This document shows, in pieces, positions 12,901 to 37,708 of a DNA stretch of 64,000 nt. The DNA is from Malacoraja senta (lineage: Eukaryota): assembly GCA_038087875.1 (NCBI GenBank), contig CM075978.1:186248001-186312000 (forward strand). Reading direction: 5' to 3'. Below the pieces are notes generated by a model. That model did not search any database. It was not told the origin of the DNA and saw nothing but the letters and a program-made list of their open reading frames with translations. Position numbers and translations under genes: made by a program. Numbering within the stretch: position 1 is the first letter of the stretch; every line of letters begins with the position of its first letter.

Positions 12901-14458
12901 GCAAAGAGTAGCCGGAAGCCAGAGGATTGGGAAACTTTCATAGGACAACAGAAGGAAACAAAACAGGCAATACGGCTGAAAAGATGAAGTACGAAGGGAA
13001 GCTGGCCAGGAATATAAAGAAGGACAGTAAAAGCTTCTTTAGATATGTTAAGGGAAAAAGAGTAGCAAAGTTAAATGTGGGTCCCTTGAAGGCAGACACG
13101 GGTGAAATTATTATGGGGAACAAGGAAATGGCAGAAGAGTTGAACAGGCACTTCGGATCTGTCTTCACTAAGGAAGACACAAACAATCTCCCAGAAGTAC
13201 TGGAGGACAGAGGATCTAAGGGGGTCGAGGAACTGAAAGAAATTTTCAATAGGCGAGAAATGGTATTGGGTAGGCTAATGGGACTGAAGGATGATAAATC
13301 CCCAGGGCCTGATGGACTGCATCCCAGGTTCCTCAGGGAGGTGGCTCAAGAAATAGTGGACGCATTGGTGATCATTTTCCAATGTTCAATAGATTCAGGA
13401 TCAGTTCCTGTGGATTGGAGGATAGCTAATGTTATCCCACTTTTCAAGAAAGGAGCGAGAGAGAAAACGGGGAATTACAGACCAGTTAGCCTGACTTCGG
13501 TGGTGGGAAAGATGCTAGAGTCAATTATTAAAGAGGTAATAATGGGGCATTTGGATAGCAGTAAAATGATTAGTCCAAGTCAGCATGGATTTATGAAAGG
13601 AAAATCATGCTTGACTAATCTTCTGGAATTTTTTGAGGATGTGACAAGTAAAATGGATGAAGGGGAGCCAGTGGATGTAGTGTATCTAGCCTTTCAGAAG
13701 CCTTTGATAAGGTCCCGCACGGGAGACTGGTGACTAAAATTAGAGCACATGGTATTGGGGGTAAGGTGTTGACGTGGATAGAAATTTGGTTGGCAGACAG
13801 GAAGCAAAGAGTAGGAGTGAACGCGTCCTTTTCAGAATGGCAGGCAGTGGCGAGTGGAGTGCCGCAAGGCTCGGTGTTGGGGCCGCAACTGTTTACCATA
13901 TATATTAATGATTTGGAAGAGGGAATTAGGAGCAACACTAGCAAGTTTGCGGATGACTCAAAGCTGGGTGGCAGTGTGAACTGTGAAGAGGATGTTAGGA
14001 GGTTGCAGGGTGACCTGGACAGGTTGAGTGAGTGGGCAGATGCGTGGCAGATGCAGTATAATATAGATAAATGTGAGGTTATCCACTTTGGTGGCAAAAA
14101 CAAGGGGGCAGATTATTATCTCAATGGGGTTAGGTTAGGTAAGGGGGAGGTACAGTGAGACCTGGGTGTCCTTGTACATCGGTCACTGAAAGTTGGTGTG
14201 CAGGTACAGCAGGCAGTGAAGAAAGCTAATGGAATGTTGGCCTTCATGACAAGAGGATTTCAGTATAGGAGTAGAGATGTTCTGCATTTGTAATGGGCTC
14301 TGGTAAGACTACATCTGGAGTATTGCGTACAGTTTTGGTCTCCTAATTTGAGGAAGGACATCCTTGTGATTGAGGCAGTGCAGCTTAGGTTCACAAGATT
14401 GATCCCTGGGATGGCGGGACTGTCATATGAGGAAAGATTGAAAAGACTAGGCTTGTAT

Positions 14459-15960
14459 CAGGGCTGCCAACTCTCACGCATTGAGCGTGAGAATCACACA
14501 TTTCGACAAATCCTCACGCACTCACGCTGATCACAAATTTCTCACGCTCTGTTGTGAGAAATTCTGTGATCAACGAAAATTTCCAAATTCATCAACTGCA
14601 TGGGCCACGGGTAGTTGGAGAGCCGGGGCTGAGGGAGGGATGGAAGCAGAAGCAGCGGTGGGCGAGTGTTTGCGGGCTGGCGAGTCGCTCGCTGCATCTC
14701 CTGCCATGGAGCAGCCTCAGTTCAAGAGTCCCGGGCCGTCGGAAGCGTTGCGCCGCTGCCCTGAGAGTCTCTGTGCCGAATTCGCTCTGGTGACCGGCAT
14801 GGACCAGGCTGCGGCTCGGTGCATCCTGGAGGACCGGGCAGTGAATGAGTGTCACCCAGCGCAGCAAGTAAGGCCATGTCCTGCTCCCGGCGGCAGTCAG
14901 AATTTGAGGATTTGCGGGAAGCGACTGACATGAGTGAGGCCGGCGAACGGCAGGAGAGAGGTACATGGGCTACGGAACCGGGGGGACTGCAGCCCCCCGC
15001 CCCACTTTTTTGGCTGGACATGTTCCAATATCTCCGGCTTTGGACGAGGCGCCGCTGTGTTCTGAGCAACCTGGTCGTGGGTGTTGGAGGGAGGGATGGA
15101 AGCAGAGGCGGGGGCAGATGCTGATGGGGAGCCGGGGCTGGCGAGTGTTTGCAGGGCTGGCGAGTGTTTGCCGGGCTGGCGAGTCGCTCGCTGTAGCTCC
15201 GGCCATGGTGCAGCCTCAGTGCAAGAGTACCGGGCCGTCGGAGGCGTCAGAAGCGTTGCGCCGCTACCTGTGGACTTGAACGTAATATGTTAAGTCCAGG
15301 GGGTCAGATGTGGGGCTTTATGTGTGGGCCAGATATATTGTCAGTGCAGAGGGGCTGGGAGCAAGGCCAAGTGTGCATCCAGAGTCATGGTCTCGAATAG
15401 TACTAGGTGTGCAGTCAAAGCTGGGACAATGGGAGTGTTCAGCACTGGGAACCTAAGCAGGTAAGCAGCTATGATCAGGGTAGAATAGGGGGCCAGGTGC
15501 AAGGCTGGACTCGGGGTCAGGAATGAGAGAAGGTATGCAACTGGAGTCAAGGTCATGAGTAGTACCAGGTGTGCAGTGAGCCCCAGGTTGGTCAACATGG
15601 GCCAAGTGCTTGATTATAATCTGATTTCCATACATGAATACACTAAGATCATTCATGTGCTGCACCTGTTGATCAGAGCCTGGCTCTACTGTGGAATGTA
15701 ATTAGGAATGTAATTTAGCCTAACCTTATTCATAGCTAATCCAATTTGAAGCATAAATATTGCATTCAAGTGTAAGTTAAAAGACTCGCTACAGTATGCA
15801 CCAGATTGCACAATTTCAAGCTGAAAAATGCAAAAGCTCCGTACCAATGGGAGTGGTGCACCCCCCTCCCACACCCTCCCCCTCCAGGTTTCTACGCTCC
15901 CTCGGGCTTGGTCTCTCGTAATTTCTCACTCCCAACTCTCACCCAATGTTGGCAGCCCTG
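14459..15960. mobile_element. Non-autonomous hAT-like DNA transposon, 1502 bp, 7-bp TSD
   Basis: Perfect 13-bp TIRs CAGGGCTGCCAAC / GTTGGCAGCCCTG; TSD CTTGTAT at 14452-14458 and 15961-15967; removal restores CR1 RLGLYSLEF. Confidence 0.92.
14640..14840 (+). pseudogene. Captured TDP2-like N-terminal UBA-like fragment inside the transposon
   Basis: RRCPESLCAEFALVTGMDQAAARCILED aligns by eye to human TDP2 RRLLCVEFASVASCDAAVAQCFLAEND (recalled). Confidence 0.6.
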
Positions 15961-17071
15961 CTTGTATTCACTGGAGTTTAGAAGGATGAGGGGGGATCTT
16001 ATAGAAACATATAAAATTATAAACGGACTGGACAAGCTAGATGCAGGAAAAATGTTCCCAATATTGGGCGAGTCCAGAACCAGGGGCCACAGTCTTAGAA
16101 TAAAGGGGAGGCCATTTAAGACTGAGGTGAGAAAAAACTTTTTCACCCAGAGCGTTGTGAATTTGTGGAATTCCCTGCCACAGAGGGCAGTGGAGGCCAA
16201 ATCACTGGATGGATTTAAGAGAGAGTTAGATAGAGCTCTAGGGAATAGATGAATCAAGGGATATGGGGAGAAGGCAGGCACGGGTTATTGATTGGGGACG
16301 ATCAGCCATGATCACAATGAATGGCGGTGCTGGCTCGAAGGGCGAAATGGCCTCCTCCTGCACCTACTTTCTATGTATCTATGTTTATTATTCATACATT
16401 TTCCCTGCCCAATACAGATTACCTAAAGAAGACGTAAAATGCTGGAGTAACTCAGCGGGTCAGGCAGCACCTCTGGAGAAATTGATATGTGACCTTTCAA
16501 GGCAGGACTCTTCTTTAGACTCCATTTTGAGTCGGGACCCTTCTTCAGACTAGTTTTGGGTTGGGACCCTTCTTCAGGCTGGTCGTAGAGCAGGGGAAGA
16601 GCAGGAATCACAGAGGGGGAGCAGAGAGAGGAGGTCTCAGAACTCCTGTCAGGGGTGAGAATTTCTTCAAAGTAGGCCTACCTTGAGGACATTTTGCAGT
16701 GGAGCAGTAAAATATAAATACAAGAACATCAGATTCTGGTTCCATTTAAAAAAAAATGTATATACAGATTACCTCACCGTCTCAATTTAAAAAAAAACTT
16801 GCATCCTTCCTCTATACGTCCTTCATCTGTCTCTTTATTCTATACTAAATAAATCTTCTAAATCCAGCTGTCTCTGCAACTCTGTTCTTTGCCAGTTCAT
16901 TGTTGGCAGAGACTTCTGTGCTTACGTCATGCTGTTTGATATTCCCTCTTTCCATCTTTTGTACTTTTTAAAACTCTCCAATCATTTCAGCTTGTTGCAA
17001 CAATTTTTGCTTGTAACAGTATTTTATAGAGCATCTTTTATAAAGGTTCTCTCTAAATGTATGTATGTTTT

Positions 17072-36003: not shown

Positions 36004-37199
36004 AATCAAGTCAAGTGAGTTTATTGTCATGTGTCCCTGATAGGACAATTAAATTCTTGCTTTGCTTCAGCACAACAGAACATAATAGGCATTGACTACA
36101 AGGTATTCTATAAATATATACACACATGAATCAATATACTGATAAAGTGCAAATAACAGTTAATTGGCTAATAAAGTTCAGTGTTTTGTCCGAGCCAGGT
36201 ATAATAGCCTGATGGCTGTGGGGAAGTAGCTATTCCTGAACCTGGTCGTTGCAGTCTTCAGGCTCTTGTACCTTCTACCTGAAGGTAGTAGGGAGATGAG
36301 TGTGTGGCCAGGATGGTGTGGGTCCTTGATGATACTGCCAGCCTTTTTGAGGCAGCGACTGTGATAGATCCCCTCGATGGAAGGGAGGTCAGAGCCGATG
36401 ATGGACTGGGCAGTGTTTACTACTTTTTGTAGTCTTTCCCTCTCCAGGGCGCTCAAGTTGCCAAACCAAGCCACGATGCAACCGGTCAGCATGCTCTCTA
36501 CTGTGCACCTGTAGAAGTTAGAGAGAGTCCTCCTTGACAAACCGACTCTCCGTAATCTTCTCAGGAAGTAGAGGCGCTGATGTGCTTTCTTAATAATTGC
36601 ATCAGTGTTCTCGGACCAGGAAAGATCTTCAGAGATGTGCACGCCCAGGAATTTGAAGCTCTTGACCCTTTCAACCATCGACCTGTTGATATAAACGGGA
36701 CTGTGGGTCCCCATCCTACTCCTTCCAAAGTCCACAATCAGTTCCTTGGTTTTGCTGGTGTTGAGGGCCAGGTTATTGTGCTGGCACCATATGGACAGTT
36801 GCTCGATCTCTCTTCTATACTCTGACTCATCCCCATCAGTGATACGTCCCACAACAGTGGTGTCGTCAGCGAACTTGATGATGGAGTTCGCACTATGTCT
36901 GGCTACGCAGTCATGAGTATAGAGTGAGTACAGCCGGGGGCTGAGCACGCAGCCTTGAGGTGCTCCCATGCTGATTGTTATCGAGTCTGACACATTTCCA
37001 CCAATACGAACAGACTGTGGTCTGAGAGTGAGGAAGTCGAGGATCCAATTGCAGAGGGATGCGCAGAGACCCAGTTCTGCGAGTTTGGTAACCAGCTTGG
37101 AGGGGATGATTGTATTAAATGCCGAGCTGTAATCGATGAATAACAGCCTGACATGAGTTTTTGTTGTCCAAGTGGTCCAGAGCGGAGTGGAGGGCCAGC
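36004..37199 (-). mobile_element. Rex1/Babar-clade LINE RT, young, truncated by assembly gap
   Basis: Open ORF: [65 protein letters not shown]; (TTGAC)n tail on minus. Confidence 0.9.
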
Positions 37200-37399
37200 N
37201 NNNNNNNNNNNNNNNNNNNNNNNNNNNNNNNNNNNNNNNNNNNNNNNNNNNNNNNNNNNNNNNNNNNNNNNNNNNNNNNNNNNNNNNNNNNNNNNNNNNN
37301 NNNNNNNNNNNNNNNNNNNNNNNNNNNNNNNNNNNNNNNNNNNNNNNNNNNNNNNNNNNNNNNNNNNNNNNNNNNNNNNNNNNNNNNNNNNNNNNNNNN
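37200..37399. other. Assembly gap (200 N)
   Basis: Run of N; flanks are unrelated sequences. Confidence 1.
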
Positions 37400-37708
37400 A
37401 ACGCCCGTCGGAACGATTTTTCAGCAAACGCTGGCACTCCAACGAAATATAATACAGGACAAGGTAGGAGAAACCCGCGTTTTAACCCCGCCCCCCCCTC
37501 AAAGGCGCCAAAATCGCGCACACGGCCAGTGGCAGAATTGCAGCGCCGCTGATGGTAAGTATTGTAACATACCTATATCTCACCCCTGCCATCGGGATGA
37601 AGGTACAGGAGCCTGAAAATTGTAACGTCCAGGCGCAGGAACAGCTTCCTCCCTACTATTAAACAATACAACCTCAAATAAACTCAGAACTTCAATATTA
37701 TTATTATT

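What the first reader, a model, noticed from the sequence alone, without database searches (positions are those of the whole stretch)
14640..14840. DNA transposon carrying a captured TDP2-like UBA exon fragment
Seen: inside a TIR/TSD-bounded element, a GC-rich ORF reads EGGMEAEAAVGE...SEALRRCPESLCAEFALVTGMDQAAARCILEDR. Known (recalled): human TDP2 starts ..EGGREAAEEEGEPEVKKRRLLCVEFASVASCDAAVAQCFLAENDW, a UBA-like domain, and the LC.EFA.V...D.A.A.C.L pattern is kept. Inference: Pack-type capture of TDP2 exon 1, cut off before the W..ERAL helix. Gene capture by cut-and-paste transposons is well known in plants and rarely described in vertebrates. The element sits in a CR1 copy with mostly intact ORF blocks, so it moved relatively recently and may be multicopy.
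Basis: partly seen in the sequence, partly recalled or inferred. Interest (0 to 1): 0.85.

Follow-up and report, generated by a model that had tools for sequence, protein, structure and literature searches.

The report
hAT transposon carrying TDP2-like first exon
A 1.5-kb non-autonomous hAT-type DNA transposon sitting in a LINE copy carries a decaying copy of the CpG-rich 5' end and first coding exon of a TDP2-like DNA-repair gene; this cargo belongs to a whole multicopy element family found in several related genomes, so it is a real but old case of a known process, gene-fragment capture.

Summary
Window 14459-15960 is a 1.5-kb element with perfect 13-nt terminal inverted repeats (TIRs) and a 7-8 bp target-site duplication (TSD).

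This copy alone matches UBA_4 and TDP2 only weakly (E 0.1-0.35). Better-preserved copies from other public contigs (L001, L002) make the case:
- They have the same hAT left end, then a full exon ending ...EDNQWLLE, a GTAAGT splice donor and at least 120 bp of intron-like DNA.
- One copy passes Pfam's UBA_4 threshold.
- A profile of the copies hits human TDP2 UBA at E 7e-5.
- A Foldseek search of Swiss-Prot models ranks six TDP2 orthologues first, N-terminus to N-terminus.

The cargo is CpG-island-like, evolves neutrally, and is covered by more than 100 distinct contigs per genome run in several organisms. The window copy is a rearranged derivative: a partial tandem duplication joined at the microhomology GGAC, about 4-5% from the family majority. 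It is therefore not recent.

The parental TDP2 locus could not be retrieved, so the source gene is inferred from protein similarity only. Two other first-stage notes of this scan report the same exon elsewhere in this genome.

Verdict: a new member of the known Pack-TIR kind, unusual for its copy number.

The parts
12927..14458 (+). Host LINE (CR1-like) copy, left part: reverse-transcriptase region broken by stops and frameshifts
   Evidence: ORFs 12927-13733 and 13730-14158 hit Pfam RVT_1 at E 2e-7 and 2e-13. The region is very highly repeated in all runs laid.
14451..14458 (.). Left copy of the target-site duplication, GCTTGTAT
   Evidence: Read from the sequence. Empty-site joints 14450->15960 share 8 letters.
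14459..14471 (+). Left terminal inverted repeat, CAGGGCTGCCAAC (begins with the hAT-type CAGGG)
   Evidence: Inverted repeat I2, 13 nt, 100% complementary. These are the only two matches in the window. The same end is present in L001 and L002.
14472..14613 (+). Left subterminal region with the repeated motif CTCACGC (four direct copies, one inverted) and a short palindrome
   Evidence: Read from the sequence; inverted repeats I3 and I6. The region is conserved in L001, L002 and L004.
14614..14834 (+). Cargo unit A: 5'UTR-like GC-rich leader (14614-14705), then the first coding exon from ATG 14706, truncated at ...CILED (14834). It lacks the last 18 nt of the exon and the splice donor.
   Evidence: Aligned to L001, L002 and L003. 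UBA_4 and TDP2 matches. At 14834, other copies run on with AACCAGTGGCTGCTGGAA then GTAAGTACCAAG.
14831..15265 (+). Cargo unit B: a second, longer partial copy of the same source. It holds upstream promoter-like DNA (14831 to about 15087), the 5'UTR-like leader, and the exon start from ATG 15205, cut at about 15265. It joins unit A at the microhomology GGAC (14831-14834).
   Evidence: Direct repeats D1, D5 and D7. L004 carries 14831-15065 as one contiguous block at 85%. L003 links the 15000-15087-like upstream DNA to the full exon. Loose ends mark the break before 15266.
15266..15947 (+). Unit Y and the right subterminal region: AT-richer, CpG-poor multicopy backbone of the element family. No coding signal was found.
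   Evidence: CpG o/e 0.17. Depth is similar to the rest of the element in DNA runs. No similarity to L001-L003.
15948..15960 (-). Right terminal inverted repeat
15960..15967 (.). Right copy of the target-site duplication, GCTTGTAT (its first base is shared with the TIR)
15968..16252 (+). Host LINE copy, right part; the reading frame continues with SLEFRRMRGDLIETYK...
   Evidence: ORF 15806-16252. Very high repeat depth.

Best explanation
The element is a non-autonomous hAT-superfamily DNA transposon of the Pack-TIR type.

Inferred history: an ancestor of the family picked up a piece of host genomic DNA. The piece comprised a few hundred bases of CpG-island promoter and 5'UTR, the first coding exon, and the start of intron 1 of a TDP2 (tyrosyl-DNA phosphodiesterase 2) orthologue. 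The exon encodes the N-terminus and helices 1-2 of the UBA-like domain. The capture most likely happened by template switching during double-strand-gap repair or replication. A hAT transposase supplied in trans then amplified the chimera to at least hundreds of copies, now shared by several related genomes.

Shown: the copies decay neutrally.

The window copy inserted into a LINE, making a 7-8 bp TSD. It carries a later internal rearrangement: a partial tandem duplication of the cargo joined at a 4-nt microhomology. This removed the end of the exon and its splice donor. This copy is therefore an inert relic. Less damaged copies still hold a promoter-like CpG island, a start codon and a consensus splice donor.
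For: Transposon:
- Perfect 13-nt TIRs beginning CAGGG, subterminal repeats and a 7-8 bp TSD.
- Empty sites in other LINE copies.
- At 1.5 kb it is too short to encode a transposase, and its ORFs hit no transposase family.

Family:
- L001 and L002 have the same left end and cargo but different flanks, so they are independent insertions.
- More than 100 distinct contigs per run cover the exon in organisms A and B (113 and 115 contigs at position 14761, counted up to 128). Runs of organisms C-G also hold 41-45% of the element's sampled words, and RNA or RNA-like runs of B, H and I cover the cargo.

Genomic origin of the cargo:
- The exon is followed by GTAAGT or GTAGGT and at least 120 bp of non-coding DNA.
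- The cargo has 64.6% GC and CpG o/e 0.79, against 0.45 for the window.

TDP2 identity:
- P0003 scores 26.5 bits on Pfam UBA_4, above the 21.8 cut-off, E 5e-6.
- A profile of four copies against all PDB sequences hits human TDP2 UBA at E 6.9e-5. C. elegans TDP2 also appears, and no other UBA protein does.
- The AlphaFold model has pLDDT 83.7.
- Foldseek against 550,129 Swiss-Prot models ranks TDP2 of human, cow, two Xenopus species, rat and chicken at 1-6. Query residues 1-49 align to TDP2 residues about 1-52. Zebrafish and C. elegans TDP2 are also in the top 30, and no p47, FAF or UBXN protein is.
- In the PDB Foldseek search human TDP2 UBA is first: 47% identity, rmsd 1.3.

Neutral decay:
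- Differences between copies fall as often on codon position 2 as on position 3. L003 has a stop in the exon.

Rearrangement in this copy:
- L004 shows 14831-15065 as one contiguous block.
- Depth dips at 14830-14853, and reads run on past 14834 into the missing exon end.

Precedent:
- 370 Pack-TIRs were found in 100 animal genomes; 208 were hAT, and the multicopy ones tended to capture GC-rich regions (PMC8277862).
Against: - The parental single-copy TDP2 locus of this genome or a relative was not retrieved. No DNA-level collinearity between source and cargo is shown, and the claim rests on about 30-50 residues of protein similarity.
- Each Foldseek E-value is weak on its own (0.1-0.4). The strength lies in the consistent ranking.
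- p47 UBA is the second PDB structural hit, at 39% identity over 28 columns.
- In poly(A) RNA of organism I, 22 reads crossing the exon end all continue unspliced (agreement 0.95). No spliced TDP2 mRNA at 82% likeness or more was seen.
- The TSD is ambiguous between 7 and 8 bp.
- No autonomous partner was identified.
- Whether the exon boundary after W-x-x-E matches the TDP2 intron position in other vertebrates could not be checked.
Confidence: 0.75

Rival explanations
1. The cargo is a captured first exon of another gene with an N-terminal UBA_4 domain, not of TDP2. Candidates are a p47/NSFL1C-, UBXN7-, FAF- or DCN1-like gene, or a lineage-specific TDP2 paralogue.
For: Only helices 1-2 of a short, widespread domain are present. 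Pfam assigns only the generic UBA_4 and UBA_8 families. p47 UBA is hit at E 1.2 by sequence and ranks second by structure. The parent gene was not found.
Against: A profile search of the PDB finds only TDP2 proteins among UBA-like domains: 26 bits for human TDP2, with no other UBA protein reported at E 10 or below. The six best of 550,129 Swiss-Prot models are all TDP2 orthologues, aligned from the N-terminal residue. p47, UBXN7, FAF1 and FAF2 are absent from the top 30.
Confidence: 0.12
2. The exon belongs to the family's autonomous hAT master element. It would be the first exon of its own gene, perhaps an old transposase-TDP2 fusion. The short elements then merely retain the master's 5' end, and no separate capture into a non-autonomous element took place.
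For: In L001 and L002 the leader and exon start only about 150 bp from the left end, where a hAT transposase gene would begin. A consensus splice donor follows. All parts of the 1.5-kb element have similar abundance.
Against: The same leader and exon also occur behind a different, promoter-like upstream sequence (L003 and window unit B). The intron-like DNA runs into a LINE fragment after about 120 bp in both L001 and L003. Copies show no coding constraint. No hAT transposase with a UBA_4 N-terminus is known to me (background knowledge). Even under this reading the exon would be of TDP2 origin by homology.
Confidence: 0.08
3. The similarity to TDP2 arose by chance in a GC-rich, stop-poor element interior, with no host gene source.
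For: The window copy alone gives only E 0.11 and 0.35. GC-rich DNA keeps long open frames by chance.
Against: A less decayed copy passes Pfam's curated threshold. The family profile reaches E 6.9e-5 against the PDB. Eight TDP2 orthologues are in the top 30 of 550,129 models. The ATG, the consensus donor at the end of the open frame and the CpG-island composition all fit a real first exon.
Confidence: 0.05

Closest known systems
Pack-TIR elements of animals, e.g. Pack-hAT-N8_XT of Xenopus tropicalis carrying 291 bp of the CAPSL 5'UTR (Tan et al. 2021, PMC8277862)
   Same: A non-autonomous hAT element with TIRs and a TSD, whose interior is a fragment of a host gene's GC-rich 5' end and which was moved to several loci. 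That paper reports that multicopy Pack-TIRs tend to capture GC-rich regions, and it explains capture by template switching.
   Different: In that survey only 4 of 370 Pack-TIRs were multicopy, and the frog example has three copies. Here more than 100 distinct contigs per genome run cover the cargo, in several organisms. The cargo includes a coding exon, a splice donor and intron DNA rather than UTR only. The parental locus is not identified here, although that survey required one.
Pack-MULEs and other Pack-TYPE transposons of plants
   Same: A cut-and-paste element carries gene fragments between its TIRs. The fragments are often GC-rich gene 5' ends, and several or duplicated fragments can sit in one element (background knowledge).
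   Different: The superfamily is hAT rather than Mutator or CACTA, and the host is an animal. Only one source gene was recognised here, present twice because of an internal duplication.
TDP2 (TTRAP/EAPII) N-terminal UBA-like domain, Pfam UBA_4; structure 6q00
   Same: The LC.(E/K)FA.V...D.A.A.C.L..N.W..E pattern is kept. Identity is 45-47% over about 30 residues, rmsd 1.3 A, and the domain sits at the protein's N-terminus.
   Different: Only helices 1-2 are encoded. Helix 3 and the whole EEP phosphodiesterase domain are absent. The copies are pseudo-exons under no constraint, and the window copy also lacks the N.W..E end.

Membership tests
hAT superfamily (non-autonomous member) | 8-bp target-site duplication | tested here: inconclusive
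   GCTTGTAT is present on both sides, but its first base on the right is also the last base of the 13-nt TIR, so the TSD is 7 or 8 bp. Empty-site joints share 8 letters. No second complete copy was available to settle it.
hAT superfamily (non-autonomous member) | Short TIRs (about 10-25 nt) beginning 5'-YARNG | tested here: met
   CAGGGCTGCCAAC, 13 nt, perfect. L002 has the same sequence and L001 has CAGAGCTGCCAAC.
hAT superfamily (non-autonomous member) | Mobilised by a transposase with BED/RNase-H-like/hAT dimerisation domains (an autonomous partner with the same ends) | not tested
   No partner was found in the window or in the fetched loci, and no eukaryotic genome collection could be searched.
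Pack-TIR / Pack-type transposon | TIR- and TSD-bounded element without a transposase gene | tested here: met
   The element is 1502 bp, and its ORFs hit no transposase family in Pfam.
Pack-TIR / Pack-type transposon | The interior derives from a host gene whose parental copy can be identified | tested here: inconclusive
   Protein-level homology to the TDP2 N-terminus, together with exon, donor and intron anatomy, is shown. The parental locus in this genome was not retrievable, and no spliced parent mRNA was seen.
Pack-TIR / Pack-type transposon | Transposition of the chimera: copies at different loci with different flanks | tested here: met
   The window copy, L001 and L002 share the left end and cargo but have unrelated left flanks. 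More than 100 contigs per run cover the cargo.
UBA_4 (PF14555) / TDP2 UBA-like domain | Score above Pfam's gathering threshold | tested here: met
   Family member P0003 scores 26.5 bits against the 21.8 cut-off. The window copy itself scores only 12.7 bits, which is not met.
UBA_4 (PF14555) / TDP2 UBA-like domain | Complete three-helix bundle | tested here: not met
   The match covers profile positions 2-31 of 43. The open frame ends at the splice donor after W-L-L-E, so helix 3 is not encoded.
TDP2 orthologue (as source gene) | Closest to TDP2 among all UBA-like proteins | tested here: met
   Profile search of the PDB. Swiss-Prot model search with the top 6 hits all TDP2. PDB Foldseek top hit 6q00.
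TDP2 orthologue (as source gene) | Intron position after the W-x-x-E codon shared with TDP2 genes; DNA collinearity with the host TDP2 locus | not testable with these tools
   No vertebrate genome or gene-structure resource was reachable. The paper that might give the human exon 1 boundary (PMC5836098) is not held.

The most novel reading that the evidence does not exclude
The family is an unusually successful vertebrate Pack-hAT, with thousands of copies across several related genomes. Each intact copy would carry a CpG-island promoter, a start codon and a consensus 5' splice site. The family would then act as a dispersed source of portable first exons that start or splice into host transcripts. 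Its CpG content (o/e about 0.8 after roughly 10% divergence) would be kept because the copies stay unmethylated.
Probability: 0.15. Interest if true: 0.7.

Novelty: new member of a known kind. Interest (0 to 1): 0.45.

Why it matters
Gene-fragment capture by cut-and-paste transposons is well documented in plants. In animals it has been surveyed, but multicopy cases are very rare there (4 of 370, about three copies each; PMC8277862).

A hAT family that amplified a promoter-plus-first-exon module of a DNA-repair gene to hundreds or more copies, and persists across several genomes, would be one of the most amplified animal examples. It would give a natural system for three questions: whether dispersed CpG islands and splice donors seed chimeric transcripts, how capture happens (the nested variants and microhomology junctions are preserved), and how fast such modules decay.

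For annotation it is a practical warning. These copies will produce spurious 'TDP2-like' or 'UBA-like' gene models.

Tried and rejected
1. A phmmer search of the 82-aa window translation against 1.84 billion representatives found only another element copy (P0001) and a spurious repeat protein. No TDP2 appeared, as expected for a match of about 30 residues at that database size.
2. The search for homologous proteins with P0001 and with the unit-X ORF returned only other element copies (P0003, P0004, P0005). Its length filter (0.55-1.75 times the query) excludes full-length TDP2, so the host protein could not be fetched.
3. Two exact-pattern scans of metagenome contigs, one with the exon core and one with the TIR plus subterminal motif, found nothing.
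4. I looked in RNA data for the spliced parent mRNA. In poly(A) reads of organism I, all 22 reads running past 14834 continue into GTAAGT..., so they are unspliced. This is negative but weak: only about 6% of the run was read, and the threshold was 82% likeness.
5. I tested whether unit X (14831-14962) is the divergent neighbour gene's first exon (ACOT13 lies next to TDP2 in human; background knowledge). Neither strand's translation resembles it, and Pfam finds nothing, so I dropped the idea.
6. A literature search for the human TDP2 exon 1 boundary failed. Reviews give isoform lengths only, and the primary paper is not held.
7. A bacterial promoter and terminator scan is irrelevant for this eukaryotic sequence and was ignored.
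8. The ESM Atlas feature search gave UBA_4 clusters at scores of 0.87-0.89. These are leads only.

Full report
**What is in the window**

The stretch 14459-15960 (1502 bp) is bounded by perfect 13-nt inverted repeats, CAGGGCTGCCAAC and GTTGGCAGCCCTG (pair I2). These are the only two matches in 64 kb. The octamer GCTTGTAT stands on both sides, at 14451-14458 and 15960-15967. On the right, its first base is also the last base of the repeat, so the target-site duplication is 7 or 8 bp.

The element interrupts a LINE reading frame...RLGLY | SLEFRRMRGDLIETYK.... The LINE ORFs to its left hit Pfam RVT_1. Contigs of four public runs laid on 13900-16500 include many that join 14450 directly to 15960, skipping 1509 bases with 8 letters fitting either side. 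These are other LINE copies without the insertion, that is, empty sites.

The left 150 bp carry four direct copies and one inverted copy of CTCACGC, plus a short palindrome. A CAGGG start, short TIRs, subterminal repeats and a 7-8 bp TSD together point to a non-autonomous hAT element. At 1.5 kb it is too short for a transposase, and its ORFs hit no transposase family.

Frame +3 is open from 14481 to 14933 and reads as quoted. Taken alone the match is weak. Pfam UBA_4 gives E 0.11 (12.7 bits, cut-off 21.8). The only PDB hit is human TDP2 UBA at E 0.35.

**Relatives**

A phmmer search of 1.84 billion representatives found one true relative, P0001 (E 5e-20, 73% identity). Further searches gave P0003, P0004 and P0005. 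Their contigs L001-L004 come from two ENA assemblies and two Logan assemblies.

L001 and L002 have the same hAT left end and subterminal region as the window but unrelated left flanks. They are therefore independent insertions. Behind the left end they carry a GC-rich leader and an exon reading MEQPQ(C/F)KSPG...LCA(E/K)FA(Q/L)VTGMDQA(A/V)ARCILEDN(Q/K)WLLE. The exon is followed at once by GTAAGT (GTAGGT in L001) and at least 120 bp of non-coding sequence. In L001 and L003 that sequence runs into a LINE fragment. The cargo is thus genomic DNA: leader, first coding exon, splice donor and intron start.

**Is it TDP2?**

- P0003 passes Pfam's curated UBA_4 threshold: 26.5 bits, E 5e-6.
- A profile of four copies (A2), searched against all PDB sequences, hits human TDP2 UBA at E 6.9e-5. 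C. elegans TDP2 also appears. No p47, FAF, UBXN, DCN1 or NXF1 protein does.
- An AlphaFold model of the exon peptide is confident (pLDDT 83.7) and shows the helices expected for the first two-thirds of a UBA.
- Foldseek against 550,129 Swiss-Prot models puts TDP2 of human, cow, Xenopus laevis, X. tropicalis, rat and chicken at ranks 1-6. Query residues 1-49 align to TDP2 residues about 1-52. Zebrafish TDP2 is rank 13 (48% identity over 33 residues) and C. elegans TDP2 is rank 27. NXF1 and DCN1 come lower, and p47, FAF and UBXN proteins are not in the top 30.
- Against solved structures the first hit is 6q00 (TDP2 UBA, 47% identity, rmsd 1.3 A), followed by p47 UBA.

Each E-value is modest because only about 30-50 residues are compared. 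The consistent, orthologue-wide, N-terminus-to-N-terminus ranking is hard to get by chance or from a different UBA_4 gene.

The cargo's composition also fits a housekeeping-gene 5' end. Positions 14614-15265 have 64.6% GC and CpG o/e 0.79, against 0.45 for the window and 0.17 for the element's unit Y.

**What I could not do**

I could not fetch a TDP2 gene or protein of this organism or its relatives. The protein search's length filter excludes full-length TDP2 for so short a query. The one exhaustive search was already spent. No eukaryotic genome collection is reachable.

Poly(A) RNA reads of organism I that cross the exon end are all unspliced: 22 reads, agreement 0.95. No parental spliced mRNA was seen at 82% likeness or more. 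The TDP2 source is therefore an inference from protein similarity and gene-like anatomy, not a demonstrated donor locus.

**Family size and age**

In two DNA-type runs of different organisms, 113 and 115 distinct contigs (counted up to 128) cover position 14761 with the majority base. Similar numbers cover the rest of the cargo. Runs of organisms C-G also hold 41-45% of the element's sampled 31-mers, and RNA or RNA-like runs of organisms B, H and I cover the cargo too.

Summed word depth over the exon is roughly 1/20 to 1/40 of that over the flanking LINE. It is some four orders of magnitude above the depth of about 20 seen for single divergent contigs. As a rough inference only, this suggests thousands of copies. 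The tool warns that depth is not a copy number.

The window copy differs from the majority base at about 12-14 of about 280 positions, for example 14697, 14702, 14722, 14761, 14786, 14870, 14899, 14906, 14924 and 14947. It is 81-83% identical to L001 and L002 overall. Differences between copies fall on codon position 2 at least as often as on position 3, and L003 has a stop in the exon. So the exon copies decay neutrally and the family is old.

**Structure of this copy**

Unit A (14614-14834) is the leader plus exon. It carries an internal deletion in the leader and a cut at ...CILED, 18 nt short of the exon end.

From 14831 a second block starts. L004 shows that 14831-15065 is one contiguous sequence elsewhere (85% identity). 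L003 links the 15000-15087-like sequence to the leader and full exon. Unit B (14831-15265) is therefore upstream promoter-like DNA, the leader and the exon start, cut again at about 15265. From there the CpG-poor backbone (unit Y) begins; loose ends mark the break before 15266.

The A|B junction shares GGAC, and depth dips there in all runs. The window element is thus a partial tandem duplication of the cargo made by a microhomology-mediated switch. This is the same kind of event thought to create Pack-TIRs (PMC8277862). Neither unit keeps the original splice donor.

The upstream part (14944-15117) is about ten times rarer than the exon in DNA runs. Most family members therefore carry the shorter cargo seen in L001 and L002.

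**Comparison with what is known**

Tan et al. 2021 (PMC8277862) scanned 100 animal genomes and found 370 Pack-TIRs, of which 208 were hAT. Only four were multicopy; one example is a 291-bp CAPSL 5'UTR fragment in hAT-N8_XT at three loci. The multicopy ones tended to capture GC-rich DNA.

The present family is the same kind of thing: hAT, a GC-rich gene 5' end, and transposed copies. It differs in copy number, in its spread over several genomes, and in carrying a coding exon with its donor and intron DNA. It is a new member of a known kind.

Two other first-stage notes of this scan (s1-203280, s1-141237) describe the same TDP2-like exon elsewhere in this genome. This agrees with a dispersed family but is not independent proof.

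**Verdict**

It is wrong on recency and on where the capture ended, and it is unproven as to the donor locus. Interest is moderate.

Noticed in passing
window 14831-14962: This block upstream of unit B is as abundant as the exon. In most other copies and transcripts it continues after 14962 with GTTCAGACGGAGAGCACTGCC... instead of the window's sequence. The break lies exactly before a GT (GAGAG|GTACAT). RNA-type contigs of 2579 and 2552 nt in two organisms end in this block, and poly(A) reads on it are strand-biased. It could be an exon or 5' end of another transcript, or another family variant. This is unresolved.
   Followed up: partly
window 14614-15265: The cargo keeps CpG o/e 0.79 at 64.6% GC even though this copy is about 4-5% from the family majority. 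The adjacent element backbone has 0.17 and the window 0.45. This may indicate that such copies escape methylation.
   Followed up: no
window 36178-37521 (-): A 447-aa ORF has RVT_1 and an ALKBH8_N (PF09004) match, E 1e-12. It belongs to another LINE copy. The window's only N run (37200-37399) lies within its coordinates and was left untouched.
   Followed up: no
L001 4370-4644 and L003 474-702: In two diverged copies (89.5% identity) the intron-like DNA behind the exon runs into the same LINE 3' fragment at the same point. That LINE piece was probably already in the source intron when it was captured, or else it is part of a longer family variant.
   Followed up: partly
same genome, other windows (notes s1-140141, s1-140137): First-stage notes report other Pack-type elements in this genome: a hAT with a copper amine oxidase exon 6.4 Mb upstream, and a Harbinger-like element with a pentraxin exon. 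If real, gene-fragment capture may be frequent in this genome. These notes are unchecked.
   Followed up: no
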